Virus record (IMG/VR): IMGVR_UViG_3300047510_001118 | Span: 62,001-126,000 of that record | Strand: one strand, 5' to 3' | Length of the DNA stretch: 64,000 bases | Translations under genes and position numbers: made by a program | Notes under the pieces: model-generated | What the model was told of the DNA's origin: nothing | Seen by the model: the letters and a program-made list of their open reading frames with translations, nothing else | Database searches by the model: none | Part shown: positions 55,043-61,520 of the stretch, one piece after another | Layout: the number at the start of each line of letters is the position of its first letter | How positions within the stretch are numbered: the stretch's first letter is position 1

Positions 55043-56482
55043 TCAGACAGGATCACCTGTGCCAATATTACTGAGGAATTGGCGCAGTTTAGTTGAATCT
55101 GCCTGTGCCCGTATTTTGGGCAAGGGTGCGCCCTGTGTGGGATCAGTGACTTCTCCAGTTTCTGGATCTGTTGCCGTATTACTGGTGCGTTTGATCTGAT
55201 CTAATATAGCAGTACTCTTGGGTCTATAGTCTGTGTCGCCTTCTATGCCCGGATCTGTGATACGCAGTGTGTCAATGTCAAAGTCTAGATCAATCTTCAT
55301 GCCCACACCACTTGATGAGCGTGTCTTCATCAACTGTATCTGATACTTGCCACGCTCACGCATAGCACGGCTGGTAAAGATACCTATGACGTTGTCTGCT
55401 GTTTGAATTTTACTGAGTCCGCCTGAAATGTGGCTGTGATCAAACTCTACTTCTTCTACAGCCGCACGGTTTAACTGGCTGGCAGTGACAAACACACACT
55501 GTTTTTCCATGGCTAGATTTCTGAGTTCTTCACTGACAAACTTGTCCTTGACAAACAGATCTGCGGGGCTGATCTTTTTGTTTATGGGCATCATTAGATC
55601 TAGGTAGTCCACTAATAACACGTCTACTTTACGATCTGTTTTGATTTCATACTCTTTTAAGTAAGCACGTATGTCATTGGCGTTCTTGCCTGAAGCCATG
55701 TATTTGACTTGGAATGCGCCCGATTTCTTGCCAATCATCTTGACCTTCATTTCCACGCCGTCTAAATCTTTGAAAATGTCCTTGGTTGATATGCCCGTGG
55801 TCATTGAATCTACACGCATACTTACCAGTGCTTCACTGAGCTCAAAGGTCAAGTACATGACGTTCAAGCCCGCCAGGGCCCAATTAACGCCCAAGTTGGC
55901 CAAGAATAGACTTTTACCTGCGCCCGAACCGCCAGCAAAGATATTCAACTCTCCGCGATTCATTCCGCCAAATAGGCGTTTGTCCACAGTTTCCCAACCA
56001 GTCTTTACCTGTCCGTTTTTGTCTTTTAGGCCTAGTAGTCTGCCCTTGGGATCACGCCAGTAGTCTGTGCCCAGATCTTTTTGAAGTCCTATCTGTACGG
56101 CCTGTTTGATCATGTCTTCCACAGGACCATAGTTGCCTTCTTCCAGCATGTCTGCGGCTTTGAGTATGGCACGTTCTAGACCCTTGTGTCGGGTAAATGT
56201 TTCAAACTCTGTGAGCAGCCAATCATAGTGCTCGTCTTTGAGCTGTCCTGGATCTTTGAGTTCTGTTTTGGTTGCGGCCACCACCATGTCAAATGTGGGC
56301 AGAGCATTGTGTTCTGACACATAGTTGTTGATGAATTCCGCTGAGTCCTGTAGTCTGCGATCAAATAGAGTGTGATCAAAAATGCTTTGGCAGCGCACAA
56401 AAGTGGCGGCATCACTGAGCATCATTTCCAAATACAGTTTCTGTATGTCATGTCCGTAGTCTGTGTTTTGTCTTGTTGTCAT
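55043..56482 (-). CDS. replicative DnaB/gp41-like helicase
   Basis: GGSGAGKS, VDYLD, TASQLNR, LMKTR. Confidence 0.93.
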   Translation of the reverse strand: MTTRQNTDYGHDIQKLYLEMMLSDAATFVRCQSIFDHTLFDRRLQDSAEFINNYVSEHNALPTFDMVVAATKTELKDPGQLKDEHYDWLLTEFETFTRHKGLERAILKAADMLEEGNYGPVEDMIKQAVQIGLQKDLGTDYWRDPKGRLLGLKDKNGQVKTGWETVDKRLFGGMNRGELNIFAGGSGAGKSLFLANLGVNWALAGLNVMYLTFELSEALVSMRVDSMTTGISTKDIFKDLDGVEMKVKMIGKKSGAFQVKYMASGKNANDIRAYLKEYEIKTDRKVDVLLVDYLDLMMPINKKISPADLFVKDKFVSEELRNLAMEKQCVFVTASQLNRAAVEEVEFDHSHISGGLSKIQTADNVIGIFTSRAMRERGKYQIQLMKTRSSSGVGMKIDLDFDIDTLRITDPGIEGDTDYRPKSTAILDQIKRTSNTATDPETGEVTDPTQGAPLPKIRAQADSTKLRQFLSNIGTGDPV

Positions 56483-56490
56483 ATACTATA

Positions 56491-57483
56491 TTATATCTCC
56501 GAGAACCAACGTTTTGCCATTAATTTGACTTTTAATTCTGACTGCTCCCTGTGCTGATAGATCTGCTCCAAACACCAAATCTTACCATAGCGTTGAACAG
56601 CATCATGTGCGTCTTTGCAGCCTGGAAACTCAGGCAGGCTCACTGACCAACCCAATTCCAGTGCTCGTGACACTGTGCGACTGCCATCTGTGTCACGATC
56701 TGGAACCAGTATGATTTCACGATCCAATCTATTGATCAGCATGGCCTGTTTTTCCATGACGTCTGCGCCCAATATGGCCACACCGTCAATGCTGAGTGCG
56801 TCCATGGGTCCTTCAACCACTACCACAAACTGTCTGTCACCCTGCTGATCTAAATTGAACACATAGCCTGGCTTTTGATCTGAAATGTACTTGGGCTTGC
56901 CCTCTACGACCTTGCGGGCAGTATTGCCCACTATGTTGCCTTGATAACGGAATGGTATGATCACACGATCTTGATAGCCATTTAAGGGTGTCCAATAGAA
57001 GTCATCCATGGGGTCAAAGCCTCGACTGTACACATAGTCTATGACCTGATTGAACCACTCTGCCAAATCCGGGGGCAGTTGATCTAAACTGATCAACCAC
57101 TGCCTGATTGGCAAACTGCCCTGGGGCAATTCACGCTGTTCAAACGTGGGCAGAGTCACAGCGGCCAGGGCCTGCTCATCTGCTTCTATTTTCATGGCTT
57201 CAAGGCTGAGTTTGGTTATGGCATCGTCTGGTGCGCCCATCCACTGCAGCAGTTGACGCATCTTACGTGGCAAATGACGCCCTGCTACATAACTGGCTTT
57301 GTATCCACAGTTAAAGCAGTGATAACTACAGCCGTCACTGTTGCGTATAATACCGCCACGCTGACGTGTGTCTAGGGTAGTGCCGTTATGATGGCAGCAC
57401 ACAGCGTTGAACTTGGTCCAACCGCTGGGTGTCTGTTTCCGTTTTGCGGGAAGGTACGTATAGATCGCATCGACGATACTCAT
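56491..57483 (-). CDS. DNA primase (gp61-like)
   Basis: N-terminal CCHH...HCFNC Zn finger; TOPRIM VEGPMDAL, DRDTDG. Confidence 0.9.
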   Translation of the reverse strand: MSIVDAIYTYLPAKRKQTPSGWTKFNAVCCHHNGTTLDTRQRGGIIRNSDGCSYHCFNCGYKASYVAGRHLPRKMRQLLQWMGAPDDAITKLSLEAMKIEADEQALAAVTLPTFEQRELPQGSLPIRQWLISLDQLPPDLAEWFNQVIDYVYSRGFDPMDDFYWTPLNGYQDRVIIPFRYQGNIVGNTARKVVEGKPKYISDQKPGYVFNLDQQGDRQFVVVVEGPMDALSIDGVAILGADVMEKQAMLINRLDREIILVPDRDTDGSRTVSRALELGWSVSLPEFPGCKDAHDAVQRYGKIWCLEQIYQHREQSELKVKLMAKRWFSEI

Positions 57484-57492
57484 ACATACATT

Positions 57493-58557
57493 TTAGTTTC
57501 TTATTCGGATTTTGTCAATGGGATTGGGCGGTCTGCCTACGGGATCTGTGCCAATACTTTCATAGACATTGGAACCACTGGTGCCAGTGCCAGTCCAAGA
57601 AATTGTGTCTATGTTGCCCTGAGTGGTCACGCCGTTGATTAGGCCTGTGACTGTGACAGTGATGTCGTTGAGTCCATTTACACCACCTAGGAAACTGCCC
57701 AATATGGTCAATGTATCACCAACTAGATAGTTCTGCCCACGCAGTACAGGGGTTACTGCTGAGTAGACGCCCGCAGTTTTGGTCACTGCGAATCGTGCGC
57801 CTGAACCAGCACCTGAACCTCTATTTCTAAAGATACGGAAACGAACAAATCTCCAATCGCCTGTGAGCGTTTTGGTAGTGTCTACACCAGTGTCCCAAAC
57901 ACCAATATTTGTCCAAGTAACGCTGTTGGCTGTGCTCTTATCACGTGTGGCTTCAACAATAATGCCGCCTTCGTATGTGCCTTCGTAATCTACAGTTATG
58001 GTTCTAGTGGCGCCTATATCATCATTGATGCTGTTGCCAAACCGTCCAACTTCACTGACATATTCTTTGCGATCAAATTCATAGTTAAACACTGTAAGTT
58101 CTTCGATCACAGTGCCTGCGGCATTGAGTTCATTGTAGCCATTTAGTACTTCTACAGATCCAAACAATTCAAACTGTCCGTCAATATACAGTGGAGTAGT
58201 ATCGTCATCACCGTCAACTAATCTAACAGCCATCAACAGTTGTTGTGGATCTACGTCATCTAATGTTGCTGTGGGTATAACCATGGATAACTGTCCAGGT
58301 TGACTGACAATAGGTGTAGCAGTGACTTCAAACAGTTTTTTGTGTTCACTGTCAAAAAATAACACATCAGCAGTGTAGCCTACAACATTCTGCTTACGCT
58401 GTTCTGAATTGCGTACATCTATCTGTATGGCATTGTCCGTGCCTTTGTATAATTTTAATTTGCGCTGATACACTTTTCTAAACTCCGTGTTGAATCCTAC
58501 TCGATCTGTAGTAACTGTAATCCTATTTGGTACTAAATAAAACTGAATTTTTTGCAT
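57493..58557 (-). CDS. probable virion structural protein
   Basis: beta-rich, Gly/Thr-rich C-terminal segment; TAAATA at 58588-58593. Confidence 0.55.
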   Translation of the reverse strand: MQKIQFYLVPNRITVTTDRVGFNTEFRKVYQRKLKLYKGTDNAIQIDVRNSEQRKQNVVGYTADVLFFDSEHKKLFEVTATPIVSQPGQLSMVIPTATLDDVDPQQLLMAVRLVDGDDDTTPLYIDGQFELFGSVEVLNGYNELNAAGTVIEELTVFNYEFDRKEYVSEVGRFGNSINDDIGATRTITVDYEGTYEGGIIVEATRDKSTANSVTWTNIGVWDTGVDTTKTLTGDWRFVRFRIFRNRGSGAGSGARFAVTKTAGVYSAVTPVLRGQNYLVGDTLTILGSFLGGVNGLNDITVTVTGLINGVTTQGNIDTISWTGTGTSGSNVYESIGTDPVGRPPNPIDKIRIRN

Positions 58558-58592: not shown

Positions 58593-58964
58593 ATGGTAAA
58601 ACTAACGGAAGAAATCAGAGAAAACTTTCCTTTTATTTCAGTGGTCCACTACGGGGGCTTGGAATACGTGGGAATCGTGATCAATCAAGATCAATATGTA
58701 ACCAGCCTTTATAATTATGAAGCTCTAAGGTCTGACCTTGAAAAACGCCAGTTTTTAGAGTTAGGCGAAGCGTGGTGGTGGGAAAGTAATCGCACTATTC
58801 CAATTAACATTTTCTTAAAAATAGAAATGGAACCCTACAAATACAGCATCATGACCATGAATACCAAAGATGTTAATGTGGTATTTGGTCCTACTATAAA
58901 CATTCACAATATTTCTATTAAACGTGTAAAACGCAAGGTCATACAGTTAATACGCAAACGTTAA
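58593..58964 (+). CDS. hypothetical protein
   Basis: 123-aa ORF. Confidence 0.7.
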   Translation: MVKLTEEIRENFPFISVVHYGGLEYVGIVINQDQYVTSLYNYEALRSDLEKRQFLELGEAWWWESNRTIPINIFLKIEMEPYKYSIMTMNTKDVNVVFGPTINIHNISIKRVKRKVIQLIRKR

Positions 58965-59539
58965 CTGTATCCGTAACTGAGACCTTCACAGATTAAATTC
59001 ATGTGTACTACCACAGCCATAGCGTAGCTCATCGCATGTGCTTTTTTAAAGTAGTATTCACCGTTCGCTGGTTTCGTCCAAATCTCCTGCCCAATCTCTG
59101 TCCAAGTCTTCCCAACTAGATGTCTCTTCGCCGGGCGGATCAAAGCGAGCAACATTGCCAACTCTTCTATACTGCGGGGTTTCATTTGTCTCAGCAACCC
59201 ACCGTGCCCATTTACGTGGAATAGTAAATCCGTGAACTCGTCCTGCTCTAGTAGATCCCATAGCGGTTCAGTCTCCATTAGTTCTGTGAGATGTTCTTCA
59301 TTGCGAACACCTGTATATATCCCTACATTTAAAAAGTCTATTTTAAAGTAGCCGCGCTGTTCAGCATCCTTGTAATCGATAGTTGATTGATTAGTTCTAT
59401 AATCTTTGGGAATAGGTGTAACATATATGCCTGTGTTATGAGGCTTTACTTCGCCGCGATCTTCTCGTACGGCCACAGTGTGTTCGAATAATTCTAAGGC
59501 TCGACTTCTATCAGCAAAGTCTATGTCAATGTCCGGCAT
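58961..59539 (-). CDS. minimal DnaE (Pol III alpha)-like catalytic core
   Basis: MPDIDIDF, HNTG, FKIDFL, FKKAHAMSY in 192 aa. Confidence 0.85.
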   Translation of the reverse strand: MPDIDIDFADRSRALELFEHTVAVREDRGEVKPHNTGIYVTPIPKDYRTNQSTIDYKDAEQRGYFKIDFLNVGIYTGVRNEEHLTELMETEPLWDLLEQDEFTDLLFHVNGHGGLLRQMKPRSIEELAMLLALIRPAKRHLVGKTWTEIGQEIWTKPANGEYYFKKAHAMSYAMAVVVHMNLICEGLSYGYS

Positions 59540-59706
59540 GTTTCAACCTTTTTCCAATCCTGAGATCCGTTAGTGTGATGTCCAATATAGCGTTCACCCG
59601 TTTCAAGATCTATTAACATCCATTTCTCTGGACACTTGGTTTTAACAACCAATGTCTTTGGTTCTGCCAATTCTTGAACTTCTTTTCCGTCTAACAGTTT
59701 TCTCAT
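59521..59706 (-). CDS. hypothetical protein
   Basis: 61-aa coupled ORF. Confidence 0.6.
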   Translation of the reverse strand: MRKLLDGKEVQELAEPKTLVVKTKCPEKWMLIDLETGERYIGHHTNGSQDWKKVETCRTLT

Positions 59707-60437
59707 AGTTTTCCTTCTTCAACAACACTACGAACCATTTCCATGTCAACTGGATAAATTCTAAATCGTTTAGACCAAAACTCTGGCTCTAACACAGCAA
59801 ATACAATGGCCAGTTGTTCGTCGTTGAATTTACTCAACAGTTGACGTCCTGACTCACAGTTTAACACTAACCAAGGACTGATTTTTCCGTCCTTAATATC
59901 ATAGACTGCTCTGTTAACACTGACGTATTTGAAATAATGATTCCATTGACTTTGATTATTATCTGCCCAGGCCATCATAGTTGATATAGATCGTTGTAGG
60001 GCCACATCAGCAGGTTCTTTCTTGATAAGGTCTAGAACATAGTCATAGTACAGTTCTTCTCTACACCAATGATCTAATTTAACTCCACTGGTTACTACAA
60101 AATCAATATATCGATCTGTATACAACGGATTAACGTTGCTTAGAAAACTGCCAAACTTGACAAAAGCATTGTAGTAAGGACTTTTGGCAAATTCTTCGTA
60201 GGTTTTTTGATTTTTTACTTTTTGCGTTAGTTGAAAAAATCTCACATAGGTCTGATAGCCTAATAAGACATGTTTCTCATCTTTGGCTAAATGTCTACGT
60301 TTCTGTTCGCACATGTGAACAGACAGAGTACTTTCTTTGGTGTACCCATTGTTACAGTACTGACAGACATATGGTTTTTCAACGGCAGTCAATTTTATCT
60401 TGATTCCTTTGTGTTTCTCGAAAACATCTAAATTCAT
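59703..60437 (-). CDS. protein with N-terminal C2H2-like zinc finger
   Basis: EKPYVCQYCNNGYTKESTLSVHMC. Confidence 0.65.
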   Translation of the reverse strand: MNLDVFEKHKGIKIKLTAVEKPYVCQYCNNGYTKESTLSVHMCEQKRRHLAKDEKHVLLGYQTYVRFFQLTQKVKNQKTYEEFAKSPYYNAFVKFGSFLSNVNPLYTDRYIDFVVTSGVKLDHWCREELYYDYVLDLIKKEPADVALQRSISTMMAWADNNQSQWNHYFKYVSVNRAVYDIKDGKISPWLVLNCESGRQLLSKFNDEQLAIVFAVLEPEFWSKRFRIYPVDMEMVRSVVEEGKL

Positions 60438-60901
60438 AATAATTTTTTAATTTCTTTGTCATCGTAACCTAGGTCTTTGGCTATTTCCTTAATTTCTTTT
60501 TCTGAAGTGATCTTTGCTAATAATTCTAATTCATCTGTTTTCATGTCAGGATAAACAGTTTCTAAAAACTTAAGAACTTTATTATTTTCACTTTTCTTTT
60601 TATAGCCAATCCATTCATGAAAGTAAATTTTCTTTTCTTCGTTGCCAGTCATACAGACTAGATACCATAATAGTTTAGGGTGCTTGCTGATATCAAAAAA
60701 GTTTTTATTATAGTATTCGTTGGTTTTAAACACAGCCAACTCTTGTGCGTCTCTATCGCTGGTTTTAATAGAACTGGCATATCGTAACAGAAGATAAAGA
60801 CTAATCTGTTTTCTTTGATCATCTGTGAAGTTATCCCAGAGATCTCTAGCACCCATATCAATGGCTGCGGTTTCGTCTTTGATAGTTAGTTTATCACTCA
60901 T
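60434..60901 (-). CDS. possible clamp-loader small subunit (gp62-like)
   Basis: size and NKNFFDISKHPKLLW segment; replication context. Confidence 0.4.
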   Translation of the reverse strand: MSDKLTIKDETAAIDMGARDLWDNFTDDQRKQISLYLLLRYASSIKTSDRDAQELAVFKTNEYYNKNFFDISKHPKLLWYLVCMTGNEEKKIYFHEWIGYKKKSENNKVLKFLETVYPDMKTDELELLAKITSEKEIKEIAKDLGYDDKEIKKLL

Positions 60902-61520
60902 CTTTAGGTCTCAATAATGCGTCAAAGGCCATAACAGTTCTAGTTCCTGTACCTGTCCACGGATATACAGTGTGCGGTATATGACTAGGGAATACTATTA
61001 TTGTGCCCGGATTTGGTGTGTATTTCCAAACATCGTTCATTACAAATTTAGTAATGTCTTTGGTCTGTGGCATTCTAAAAAGAATCTGTCCGTCCGATAC
61101 TTTTTTATTTTCATCAAAGTCTGGAGCAGTAATATACATGTTTCCACTGATATGTCCTCCAGGATGACTATGAAGTTCTTGATATTCGCCTTCGTGTTGT
61201 TGTATAGTCCAGATGCTGGTTATCAACGGTTTACATAATTTTAATTCTTCAGCACCACTTTGTGCTGTGACAAGGTCCATGTATCCTTGGCAGACATATT
61301 CCAAATACTTTACCAACCAACTGACGTCTATGTCTAATTGATTAGGATATACCTGTATTTGTTGTCCCCCACGCAGGCTGATGTTAGGATCACCGCCATC
61401 GTTTAATTCCGGGTGACTGTGAAACTCGTCAGCCAACTTATGAATTTTTACAAAGGTGGATGCTGGGATATCATCTAATGCTATAACAGTGGGTTGAAAG
61501 TATGCTACCTTAAATGCCAT
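60894..61520 (-). CDS. putative 2OG-Fe(II) oxygenase
   Basis: QELHSHPGGHISG...FPSHIPHTV...RTVMAF. Confidence 0.8.
   Translation of the reverse strand: MAFKVAYFQPTVIALDDIPASTFVKIHKLADEFHSHPELNDGGDPNISLRGGQQIQVYPNQLDIDVSWLVKYLEYVCQGYMDLVTAQSGAEELKLCKPLITSIWTIQQHEGEYQELHSHPGGHISGNMYITAPDFDENKKVSDGQILFRMPQTKDITKFVMNDVWKYTPNPGTIIVFPSHIPHTVYPWTGTGTRTVMAFDALLRPKDE

What the first reader, a model, noticed from the sequence alone, without database searches (positions are those of the whole stretch)
58961..59539. 192-aa C-family polymerase core retaining all three catalytic aspartates
Seen: PDIDID at the N-terminus, HNTG, KIDFL and FKKAHA in 192 aa, with no PHP, clamp-binding or OB domains, next to primase and helicase genes. 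Established: DnaE is >1000 aa, with these motifs spread over several hundred residues. Inference: a radically minimised or split replicase subunit, or a repurposed nucleotidyltransferase.
Basis: partly seen in the sequence, partly recalled or inferred. Interest (0 to 1): 0.6.

Follow-up and report, generated by a model that had tools for sequence, protein, structure and literature searches.

The report
Catalytic half of split mini-polymerase
This 192-residue protein of a freshwater jumbo phage is the catalytic back half of a stripped-down, two-piece relative of the bacterial replicative DNA polymerase (Pol III alpha); comparative genomics described this kind of enzyme in 2021, and I found no bench test of it.

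Summary
The ORF is real (window 58961-59539, minus strand, 192 aa) and its motifs are not chance. It matches PHROG 11778 end to end (E 6e-65) and hits DnaE profiles in three collinear pieces. Its AlphaFold model (pLDDT 96) aligns over 184-189 of 192 residues to Pol III alpha/PolC residues ~400-784 (Z 9-10; next unrelated hit Z 3.8). D3, D5 and D68 correspond to E. coli D401, D403 and D555 and are invariant in 91 diverse homologues. dN/dS is about 0.14.

It is not a complete core. It starts exactly at the DxD strand and lacks the NTP-binding GRGS half of the palm. Relatives encode that half as a separate ~170-aa protein (PHROG 11127) 31-224 kb away. A rare 375-aa natural fusion joins the two halves. 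A complex model pairs them (ipSAE 0.91, best control 0.00).

The partner gene is absent from this 278-kb record. The record is about 75% complete and also lacks the clamp-loader gene that sits beside the partner in relatives. The phage has its own 913-aa PolB, so this is an accessory enzyme.

Iyer et al. 2021 (PMC7824862) already described this split minimal Pol III alpha in group 2.2 jumbo phages. Verdict: a new member of a known kind; activity and role are untested.

The parts
58961..59539 (-). C-terminal unit of the split minimal Pol III alpha (192 aa, protein P0001): second half of the palm plus a reduced fingers domain
59516..59536 (-). P2-F8 'PDIDIDF', the first beta-strand. D3 and D5 correspond to the catalytic D401 and D403 of E. 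coli; D7 corresponds to D405.
   Evidence: D3 and D5 are invariant and D7 is kept in at least 90% of 91 diverse homologues; motif map; the complex model places this strand against N-unit residues 132-134
59429..59440 (-). H34-G37 'HNTG', matching E. coli HAGG 511-514. The thumb that lies between this motif and the DxD strand in DnaE (about 105 aa) is reduced here to a beta-hairpin of about 26 aa.
59330..59344 (-). K66-L70 'KIDFL'. K66 and D68 correspond to E. coli K553 and D555, the third catalytic aspartate.
   Evidence: K66 and D68 are invariant; hhalign against E. coli DnaE 545-642
59126..59137 (-). R135-K138 'RPAK', a fingers motif matching E. coli 'RPGP' 639-642
   Evidence: P136 is invariant; R135 and K138 are kept in at least 90%; Pfam DNA_pol3_finger
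59033..59050 (-). F164-A169 'FKKAHA', a fingers motif matching E. coli 'FNKSHS' 756-761
   Evidence: K165 and H168 are kept in at least 90%; residues 165-168 touch the N-unit in the complex model
59521..59706 (-). 61-aa ORF directly upstream, overlapping the C-unit start by 19 nt. Operon context only; no link to the enzyme is shown.
   Evidence: phrog_4098 positions 507-559 of 559; called as a gene on six independent contigs
59703..60437 (-). 244-aa ORF (phrog_11058) with a stop/start overlap of 4 nt to its neighbours. C2H2-like zinc knuckle followed by a helical body. Conserved upstream neighbour of the C-unit; function unknown.
60434..60901 (-). 155-aa ORF, homologous to the C-terminal part of the protein annotated 'sliding-clamp-loader small subunit' in phage Turkey3
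58593..58964 (+). 123-aa convergent ORF (phrog_11637) overlapping the C-unit's 3' end by 4 nt. This arrangement is conserved in all relatives examined, including the contig that carries the fused form.

Best explanation
The ORF encodes the C-terminal unit of a two-piece, minimal C-family (Pol III alpha-like) polymerase of the Rak2/121Q/PA5oct/Atu_ph07-type ('group 2.2') jumbo phages. It carries the metal-binding strand (D3, D5), the third catalytic aspartate (D68) and a cut-down fingers domain (RPxK, FKKxH). It begins exactly where the NTP-binding half of the palm ends. A separate ~165-180-aa protein (phrog_11127), ending in ...GVGRGSSVASY...EFL, supplies that half. The two are inferred to dock non-covalently, with the N-unit's GRGS strand lying beside the C-unit's DxD strand, and so to rebuild a complete Pol-beta-like nucleotidyltransferase active site. 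The enzyme has no PHP, thumb, clamp-binding or OB domain, and the phage has its own PolB. It is therefore inferred to be an accessory, probably distributive DNA polymerase of the T4-like replication/recombination module, for example for primer extension or hand-off next to the primase, or for recombination-dependent and repair synthesis. Shown here: homology, fold, residue conservation, purifying selection, co-occurrence with the N-unit, a natural fusion, and a supportive complex model. Inferred, not shown: physical binding, polymerase activity and the role in the cell.
For: Family and fold: phrog_11778 E 6e-65 and phrog_405 E 4e-11, with three collinear DnaE pieces. AF2 gives pLDDT 96.1 and pTM 0.88. 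The top 17 Foldseek PDB hits are all Pol III alpha/DnaE/PolC. VIA-align gives Z 9.9 to 3e0d_A (rmsd 3.5, 189 aligned, chain 461-841) and Z 9.2 to E. coli 2hnh (184 aligned, chain 400-784); the next unrelated hit has Z 3.8. Conservation: D3, D5, K66, D68 and P136 are invariant in 91 sequences that go down to 29% identity. Selection: median dN/dS is 0.14 (range 0.04-0.35) over 342 unsaturated pairs. Standalone family: 410 clusters at 50% identity, nearly all 185-215 aa, and about 8000 word-search hits of about 192 aa. Partner: the fused 375-aa P0214 carries phrog_11127 at residues 8-180 and phrog_11778 at 190-374, and its N half hits DnaE positions 357-462. The N-unit's GxGRGS...S aligns with E. 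coli DnaE 359-368. Both units are present in 3 of 3 isolates, 31-224 kb apart, and in 4 of 5 large IMG/VR relatives, including the 100%-complete one. Complex model of P0001 with the N-unit of relative G001: ipSAE 0.91 against a best control of 0.00, 152-156 contacts, partner pLDDT 91, runs agreeing in at least 98% of contacts (the tool's mark was reached by 58 of 80 solved complexes and 2 of 110 mismatched pairs). C-unit residues 2-9 contact N-unit residues 132-134. Context: the genome has a PolB, and the ORF sits in a cluster with gp32, UvsX, UvsY, UvsW, primase and DnaB. Prior description: Iyer et al. 2021, PMC7824862.
Against: The N-unit is not in this 278-kb record, so the pairing was modelled with a relative's N-unit, not the cognate one. 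The high complex score may simply reflect the model's memory of intact DnaE, where the two halves are one domain; it shows likeness, not binding. The thumb, the clamp-binding motif and much of the fingers are absent, so stable primer-template binding is doubtful without helpers. No biochemical or genetic data on any member turned up in the paper library. No RNA run holds the locus.
Confidence: 0.72

Rival explanations
1. A self-sufficient, radically minimised polymerase: the 192-aa protein alone is the enzyme.
For: All three catalytic aspartates and the fingers motifs are present and invariant. The model folds confidently as a single chain. No partner is found in this record.
Against: It lacks the GRGS NTP-binding half that every Pol-beta-like palm needs. 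That half co-occurs as a separate gene in 7 of 8 large relatives and is fused to the C-unit in P0214, P0272 and P0273. The complex model gives an interface of about 150 contacts that buries the catalytic strand. The record is only 75% complete and also lacks the clamp-loader large subunit that sits beside the N-unit in relatives.
Confidence: 0.04
2. A repurposed two-piece nucleotidyltransferase that is not a templated DNA polymerase, for example a terminal transferase, an enzyme that modifies primers or DNA ends, or a maker of a nucleotide signal or counter-defence molecule.
For: There is no thumb, clamp-binding motif, HhH or OB domain. The phage already has a full PolB. The Pol-beta fold supports many non-polymerase chemistries (established knowledge).
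Against: The fingers motifs (RPxK, FKKxH) serve templated synthesis in C-family polymerases (from memory, not tested here), and they are retained under strong constraint. Both halves sit in replication modules: the C-unit beside the clamp-loader small-subunit homologue, primase and helicase, and the N-unit beside the clamp-loader large subunit and, in Turkey3, gyrase.
Confidence: 0.17
3. A decaying fragment or pseudogene of a captured bacterial dnaE.
For: It covers only about a third of the DnaE region it matches, and the Pfam scores are below cut-off.
Against: dN/dS is about 0.14. Length is fixed at about 192 aa across thousands of homologues and 410 clusters at 50% identity. The catalytic residues are invariant. 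The fold is compact and confident. Synteny is conserved from E. coli phages to rhizobial phages.
Confidence: 0.01
4. Two halves joined after translation by a split intein, as in cyanobacterial dnaE.
For: The two halves are encoded far apart, as in the Synechocystis split dnaE (from memory).
Against: There is no room for intein halves. The N-unit stops just after the conserved EFL(R), and the C-unit has only M-P before the DxD strand. The natural fusion shows only about 10 linker residues. No intein family was hit in Pfam or PHROGs.
Confidence: 0.01

Closest known systems
Split minimal DNA polymerase III alpha of group 2.2 jumbo phages, C-terminal unit (Iyer, Anantharaman, Krishnan, Burroughs & Aravind 2021, Viruses 13:63, PMC7824862; PHROG 11778; GenBank labels such as 'DnaE-like DNA polymerase III alpha' in phage Phosso)
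   Same: Same family (phrog_11778, E 6e-65) and same length. It shows 34-54% identity to the copies in Phosso, Atu_ph07, PA5oct, 121Q/PBECO4, RaK2 and others. Synteny and the PolB-based T4-like replisome are the same.
   Different: This is an uncultured freshwater member, at most 54% identical to any isolate. Its N-terminal partner is not on the incomplete record. Three things here go beyond what I found in that paper's main text (its supplements are not held): a rare fused single-chain form, a quantified complex model, and a selection estimate.
Bacterial Pol III alpha / DnaE (E. coli 2hnh, Thermus aquaticus 3e0d and 2hpi, M. tuberculosis 5lew and 7pu7) and PolC (3f2b)
   Same: It has the Pol-beta-like palm with D401/D403/D555 equivalents, the K-x-D motif, and the fingers motifs RPxx and FxKxH. 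Nearly the whole model superposes on DnaE residues about 400-784 (Z 9-10).
   Different: There is no PHP domain, the thumb is reduced to a hairpin, and about 200 residues of insertions are gone. There is no beta-clamp motif, (HhH)2, OB or tau-binding domain. The palm is broken between the GS motif and the DxD strand into two polypeptides. It is not the main replicase.
Bacillus subtilis DnaE working beside PolC (two C-family polymerases at one fork; a functional analogy recalled from the literature, not tested here)
   Same: A second, less processive polymerase encoded alongside a main replicase, with a proposed role in extending primers before hand-off. The C-unit lies two genes from the primase.
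   Different: In this phage the main enzyme is a family-B polymerase. No activity data exist. The analogy is an inference only.
Split-intein dnaE of cyanobacteria
   Same: A C-family polymerase encoded by two distant genes.
   Different: There are no intein sequences, the break point is different (inside the palm), and the halves presumably stay separate.

Membership tests
C-family DNA polymerase catalytic subunit (Pol III alpha / DnaE / PolC) | Three catalytic aspartates on the Pol-beta-like palm (E. coli D401, D403, D555) | tested here: met
   D3, D5 and D68 align to them by motif and are invariant in 91 diverse homologues. The palm superposes on the solved polymerases.
C-family DNA polymerase catalytic subunit (Pol III alpha / DnaE / PolC) | N-terminal half of the palm, with the GS (GxGRGS) NTP-binding motif, in the same polypeptide | tested here: not met
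   The ORF starts at M-P-D-I-D. In relatives the GRGS half is a separate protein, phrog_11127.
C-family DNA polymerase catalytic subunit (Pol III alpha / DnaE / PolC) | Fingers domain with the conserved RPGP-like and FNKSH-like motifs | tested here: met
   RPAK at 135-138 and FKKAH at 164-168 are conserved. Pfam DNA_pol3_finger scores 0.0036, below cut-off. The structural alignment runs to E. coli residue ~784. The domain is much shortened.
C-family DNA polymerase catalytic subunit (Pol III alpha / DnaE / PolC) | PHP domain, full thumb, beta-clamp-binding motif, OB fold and tau-binding C-terminus | tested here: not met
   The full-length DnaE profile phrog_405 matches only positions 441-809, all inside this ORF, and nothing else in the 278-kb record. 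PF07733 finds only this ORF. The model has a 2-strand hairpin where the thumb would be.
C-family DNA polymerase catalytic subunit (Pol III alpha / DnaE / PolC) | Template-directed DNA synthesis | not testable with these tools
   No biochemical report on any member was found in the paper library.
Split minimal Pol III alpha of group 2.2 jumbo phages, C-terminal unit (Iyer et al. 2021; PHROG 11778) | Standalone protein of about 190 aa matching the family profile end to end | tested here: met
   phrog_11778 E 6e-65, residues 3-185 against profile positions 8-193 of 197. 96 phage records, all jumbo phages of this group.
Split minimal Pol III alpha of group 2.2 jumbo phages, C-terminal unit (Iyer et al. 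2021; PHROG 11778) | The phage carries a family-B polymerase and a T4-like replisome | tested here: met
   PolB in a 913-aa open frame at G000 267958-270696. DnaB, primase, UvsW, UvsX, UvsY and gp32 homologues are present.
Split minimal Pol III alpha of group 2.2 jumbo phages, C-terminal unit (Iyer et al. 2021; PHROG 11778) | A separate N-terminal NTP-binding unit encoded at a distant site in the same genome | tested here: inconclusive
   It is not found in G000. But G000 is 75% complete, and its end coincides with the edge of a block collinear with the complete relative G003. In G003 the N-unit lies about 11 kb past that edge, in a stretch with no counterpart in G000. The clamp-loader gene next to the N-unit is also missing from G000. 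The N-unit is present in 3 of 3 isolates and 4 of 5 large relatives.
Split minimal Pol III alpha of group 2.2 jumbo phages, C-terminal unit (Iyer et al. 2021; PHROG 11778) | Conserved gene neighbourhood | tested here: met
   The order is the same in Phosso, Atu_ph07, Turkey3 and metagenomic contigs: ORF244 family, small ORF, C-unit, convergent ORF123 family, structural-like gene, then primase and helicase (a single primase/helicase gene in Atu_ph07). The clamp-loader small-subunit homologue upstream of ORF244 was checked in Turkey3 only.

The most novel reading that the evidence does not exclude
The two pieces assemble into the smallest known active C-family DNA polymerase (about 360 aa in total, with no PHP, thumb or clamp tether). 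It would work beside the phage PolB as a dedicated primer-extension/hand-off or recombination-repair polymerase, giving a two-polymerase fork in a phage. The rare fused form offers a ready-made single-chain version for structure and enzymology. If, as Iyer et al. suggest, it reflects an ancestral state, it would be a living model of the pre-cellular Pol III core.
Probability: 0.3. Interest if true: 0.7.

Novelty: new member of a known kind. Interest (0 to 1): 0.35.

Why it matters
C-family polymerases are the bacterial replicases and an antibiotic target. All characterised members exceed 900 aa, and it is unclear which parts are truly needed for catalysis. A widespread, strongly conserved phage version cut down to a palm plus short fingers, and split inside the palm, defines a natural minimal core. 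It also raises the question of why a phage with a full PolB keeps a second polymerase. The family is very abundant: about 8000 word-search hits, 410 clusters at 50% identity, and hundreds of IMG/VR contigs, many from freshwater. I found no bench test of it. For this scan the result is mainly a correct re-discovery. The idea was published in 2021, so the window adds an environmental member and some supporting analyses, not a new kind of system.

Tried and rejected
(1) The nearby 354-aa ORF (57493-58557, minus strand) contains 'RGSGAGS', identical to the DnaE GS motif, and looked like a possible N-unit. The match is a 16-residue low-complexity stretch and lies in an insertion absent from the Turkey3, Atu_ph07 and Phosso homologues. 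I reject it as chance.

(2) Direct searches of G000 for the N-unit found nothing: PF07733, phrog_405 and phrog_11127, and tblastn plus hmmsearch --max with four N-units. I read this as record incompleteness, not loss.

(3) I tried to reach a longer contig carrying the identical protein (381 kb on record; a 246-kb JGI contig). That record is not held.

(4) hhalign of the shallow 25-sequence alignment against single-sequence E. coli DnaE gave only 3.6% probability. The aligned KxDFL-to-RP block was correct, but the test was uninformative.

(5) Alignment A6, meant to support a fold of the fused protein, misplaced the N-units, so I dropped it and did not fold the fused form.

(6) The upstream 244-aa ORF was folded (pLDDT 89). 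It has no convincing PDB relative (Foldseek best E 1.7; VIA-wide best Z 4.6, on AAA+-lid-like helices), so no function is assigned. Binding of any neighbour to the C-unit was not tested, because the only complex job went to the N-unit.

(7) There is no DnaQ/RNase_T exonuclease in G000.

(8) No RNA run holds the locus, so read laying was not used and expression is unknown.

(9) A split intein is rejected for lack of room.

Full report
OBSERVATION. An ATG-initiated ORF of 192 codons lies at exactly 58961-59539, on the minus strand; the plus-strand reading is full of stops. The product (P0001) begins MPDIDIDF and contains HNTG (34-37), KIDFL (66-70), LIRPAK (133-138) and FKKAHAMSY (164-172). I fetched E. 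coli dnaE for comparison. The same motifs occur there in the same order: PDFDVDF 400-406 (D401, D403), HAGG 511-514, KFDFL 553-557 (D555), LFRPGP 637-642 and FNKSHSAAY 756-764. So D3, D5 and D68 are the counterparts of the three catalytic aspartates, and about 365 residues of DnaE are compressed into about 170. Primase (56491-57483) and a DnaB-like helicase (55043-56482) lie on the same strand two genes downstream.

IS IT REAL HOMOLOGY? Yes.
- P0001 matches PHROG 11778 ('DNA polymerase', 197 positions) end to end at E 6e-65, and the full-length DnaE PHROG 405 at E 4e-11.
- A genome-wide scan with PHROG 405 finds three collinear pieces, at profile positions 441-455, 579-678 and 777-809, all inside this ORF and nowhere else in the record.
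- Pfam's DNA_pol3_finger and DNA_pol3_alpha score below their cut-offs, and phmmer against PDB gives only E 0.12 to Thermus Pol III alpha, again in three collinear pieces. Simple annotation would therefore miss it.
- An AlphaFold2 model built on 91 diverse homologues is very confident (pLDDT 96.1, pTM 0.88).
- The 17 best Foldseek matches in PDB are all C-family polymerases.
- VIA-align superposes 184-189 of the 192 residues on Thermus Pol III alpha 461-841 (Z 9.9, rmsd 3.5), E. coli alpha 400-784 (Z 9.2) and PolC (Z 9.8). The best unrelated chain scores Z 3.8.

IS IT A LIVING GENE? Yes.
- The word search scored 7992 relatives among 8000 candidates, nearly all about 192 aa.
- The exhaustive search over 1.84 billion cluster representatives found 410 clusters at E<=1e-3, almost all 185-215 aa.
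- Across 91 sequences down to 29% identity, D3, D5, K66, D68 and P136 are invariant. D7, H34, G37, R135, K138, K165 and H168 are kept in at least 90%.
- Nei-Gojobori dN/dS over 81 genes has a median of 0.14 (0.04-0.35) for the 342 pairs with unsaturated dS.

WHOSE GENE IS IT? The window is part of a 278,126-bp IMG/VR virus record judged 75% complete. tblastn finds the protein in 96 phage records. All listed are jumbo myophages of the RaK2/121Q/PBECO4/PA5oct/Atu_ph07/Phosso type, at 34-54% identity, and gene order is conserved. The surrounding genes on the minus strand form a T4-like replication/recombination module, in this order:
- gp32-like SSB, UvsX, UvsY, a 420-aa unknown, UvsW
- a 2OG-Fe(II) oxygenase
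- a homologue of the annotated clamp-loader small subunit
- a 244-aa zinc-knuckle protein and a 61-aa ORF
- the C-unit, then a convergent 123-aa ORF
- a structural-like 354-aa protein
- primase and DnaB

The record also encodes a 913-aa family-B polymerase, so this protein is not the main replicase. Near-identical DNA occurs in freshwater and lake metagenomes from about ten studies. No RNA run holds it.

WHAT IS MISSING, AND WHERE IS IT? A Pol-beta-like palm needs a glycine/serine NTP-binding motif just before the DxD strand. In E. coli this is GPGRGSGAGS (359-368). P0001 starts two residues before the DxD strand, so it lacks this half. One representative in the exhaustive search was longer: P0214 (375 aa) carries the C-unit at 190-374. 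Its residues 8-180 match PHROG 11127 ('DNA polymerase', 171 positions; E 5e-33) and DnaE profile positions 357-462, including GVGRGSSSAS. PHROG 11127 is thus the N-terminal unit.

In isolates it is a separate ORF of about 180 aa that ends right after ...EFL. It lies 31 kb (Turkey3), 182 kb (Atu_ph07) and 224 kb (Phosso) from the C-unit. Aligned with E. coli DnaE 255-399, GxGRGS...S is invariant. It is as common in IMG/VR as the C-unit: 591 of 600 matched stretches, against 552 of 600 for the C-unit.

This is exactly what Iyer et al. (2021, PMC7824862) reported for 'group 2.2' jumbo phages. They describe a previously unrecognised, phage-specific minimal Pol III alpha, split into an N-terminal NTP-binding protein and a C-terminal Mg2+- and template-binding protein encoded by distant genes, accompanying a family-B polymerase. 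I found no later paper and no experiment on it.

THE PARTNER IN THIS GENOME. No N-unit is detectable in the 278-kb record: PHROG 11127 at E<=1, and tblastn and hmmsearch --max with four N-units. I attribute this to the record being incomplete, for four reasons.
- Four of five large relatives (63-71% identical C-units) have the N-unit, including the one rated 100% complete. It lies 163-186 kb from the C-unit, a distance that would fall outside this record on either side.
- The complete relative G003 is collinear with G000 250.6-277.0 kb over its 145-181 kb, and G000 ends at 278.1 kb. The N-unit sits at G003 191.9-192.4 kb, inside a 22-kb stretch (181-203 kb) with no counterpart in G000.
- In all four relatives the clamp-loader large subunit lies 1-3 kb from the N-unit. 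The two records that lack the N-unit (G000 and G005, 75% and 79% complete) also lack this core replication gene.
- The genomes are not perfectly collinear: G003 203-206 kb matches G000 146-151 kb. The location is therefore an inference, not a demonstration.

DO THE HALVES FIT? I modelled P0001 with the N-unit of relative G001, each with its own alignment. The tool's verdict is that the model supports binding but does not show it.
- ipSAE was 0.91 (0.90-0.91 in three runs) against a best control of 0.00.
- There were 152-156 confident contacts, partner pLDDT was 91, and the runs agreed in at least 98% of contacts.
- The tool's mark was reached by 58 of 80 solved complexes and 2 of 110 mismatched pairs. 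These counts hold only roughly because my own alignments were used.
- The interface puts the C-unit's catalytic strand (residues 2-9) against N-unit residues 132-134, the strand leading into GRGS. It also puts the FKKAH segment (165-168) against N-unit residues 142 and 161. This is the arrangement expected if the two proteins rebuild one DnaE-like palm.
- Two caveats apply. The N-unit is not the cognate one. And the model may be recalling intact DnaE, so the pass shows likeness rather than binding.

THE FUSED FORM. Only three clusters (375-376 aa, 78-81% identical to each other, from ENA and Logan assemblies) carry both halves in one chain. On its contig, the fused gene is followed by a convergent homologue of the window's 123-aa ORF, so it occupies the C-unit locus. 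In a quick maximum-likelihood tree the three fused C-halves form one clade (SH-aLRT 100). That clade is nested within a starred clade of split C-units of 206-222 aa. A secondary re-fusion is therefore the most parsimonious reading. The deep forks are weak, the careful search did not finish, and the E. coli outgroup branch is very long, so I do not treat the polarity as settled. Either way, the fusion is independent 'Rosetta-stone' evidence that the two units work together. I did not see it mentioned in the 2021 paper's text.

MECHANISM (INFERRED). The N-unit would hold the incoming nucleotide's triphosphate through its GRGS loop. The C-unit would bind the two metals through D3, D5 and D68 and contact nucleotide and template through the remnant fingers. 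With no thumb, clamp-binding motif, (HhH)2 or OB domain, the enzyme should be distributive unless helped.

Its two genes sit next to clamp-loader subunit genes: the small-subunit homologue by the C-unit and the large subunit by the N-unit. The C-unit is also close to primase and helicase and to the UvsX/UvsY/UvsW/gp32 recombination genes. This fits an accessory role at the fork or in recombination-dependent and repair synthesis, as Iyer et al. also suggested. Primer extension before hand-off to PolB, as recalled for B. subtilis DnaE/PolC, is an attractive but untested version. A non-polymerase nucleotidyltransferase role cannot be excluded.

REJECTED ALTERNATIVES.
- Self-sufficient mini-polymerase: it lacks the NTP-binding half.
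- Pseudogene remnant: contradicted by selection, conservation and abundance.
- Split intein: there is no room for intein halves.
- The 354-aa neighbour as N-unit: its RGSGAGS sits in a non-conserved low-complexity insertion.

The 244-aa upstream neighbour folds confidently (pLDDT 89). It has a zinc knuckle (C25, C28, H41 and C43 invariant) followed by a helical body with no convincing PDB relative. Its function and any link to the enzyme remain open, and binding of neighbours was not tested.

VERDICT. The system was already described computationally in 2021, so this is a new, environmental member of a known kind. Interest is moderate: the biology is unusual and I found no bench test of it, but the finding is a re-discovery.

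Noticed in passing
window 59703-60437 (-): The 244-aa protein (phrog_11058) is translationally coupled to its neighbours by 4-nt stop/start overlaps, in a run that ends in the C-unit. It is as widespread in IMG/VR as the C-unit (599 of 600 stretches). It has an invariant C-C-H-C zinc knuckle and a confident all-helical model (pLDDT 89) with no convincing PDB match (Foldseek best E 1.7; VIA-wide best Z 4.6, to AAA+-lid-like bundles). It is a conserved replication-module protein of unknown fold and function.
   Followed up: partly
window 58593-58964 (+): The 123-aa ORF (phrog_11637) is convergent with the C-unit and overlaps its stop by 4 nt. This tail-to-tail pair is conserved in Phosso, Atu_ph07, Turkey3, all six metagenomic contigs examined, and next to the fused form. 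Function unknown.
   Followed up: partly
proteins P0214, P0272, P0273; locus L189:1066-2193: These are rare natural single-chain versions (375-376 aa) of the otherwise split enzyme, with only about 10 linker residues between the N-unit and the C-unit. They form one clade nested among split forms in a quick tree. They look like a useful construct for biochemistry.
   Followed up: partly
window 59521-59706 (-): The 61-aa ORF overlaps the C-unit start by 19 nt. It matches only the last 53 positions of a 559-position PHROG (4098, function unknown), so in other phages this segment may be the tail of a much larger protein.
   Followed up: no
window 57493-58557 (-): The 354-aa protein has a weak 'virion structural protein' PHROG hit, and its homologues are annotated as tail fibre or structural proteins. 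It sits in the middle of the replication module between the C-unit and the primase. It carries a lineage-specific insertion containing RGSGAGS that mimics the DnaE GS motif by chance.
   Followed up: yes
window 60894-61520 (-): A 2OG-Fe(II) oxygenase (PF13759, E 3e-19) is inserted between UvsW and the clamp-loader small-subunit homologue. It is not present at this position in Turkey3.
   Followed up: no
G000:C1 ~125.8-127.0 kb (L190:763-2025, -); the gene starts just past the window's right end: A 420-aa ORF between UvsY and UvsW has no Pfam or PHROG hit. Turkey3 has an annotated DnaQ-like 'Pol III epsilon' at the equivalent position. No RNase_T family match exists anywhere in G000.
   Followed up: partly
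G003 (L105-L108) against G000: The complete relative G003 and this record are collinear over about 36 kb up to G000's very end. After that, G003 203-206 kb matches G000 146-151 kb. This is either a rearrangement between relatives or an assembly or permutation effect.
   Followed up: partly
L271 (Turkey3 262771-265333), L272 (Phosso 97210-101308), G001-G004: The N-unit has its own conserved neighbourhood: N-unit, a small ORF, GroES co-chaperonin, then the clamp-loader large subunit (seen in the annotated isolates). In the metagenomic relatives the clamp-loader gene lies 1-3 kb from the N-unit. In Turkey3, gyrase B and A lie upstream. Each half of the enzyme thus sits beside one clamp-loader subunit gene.
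   Followed up: partly
window 56491-57483 (-): The primase start is called differently on near-identical contigs (256, 260 or 330 aa). The 330-aa ORF includes the N-terminal zinc-binding part.
   Followed up: no
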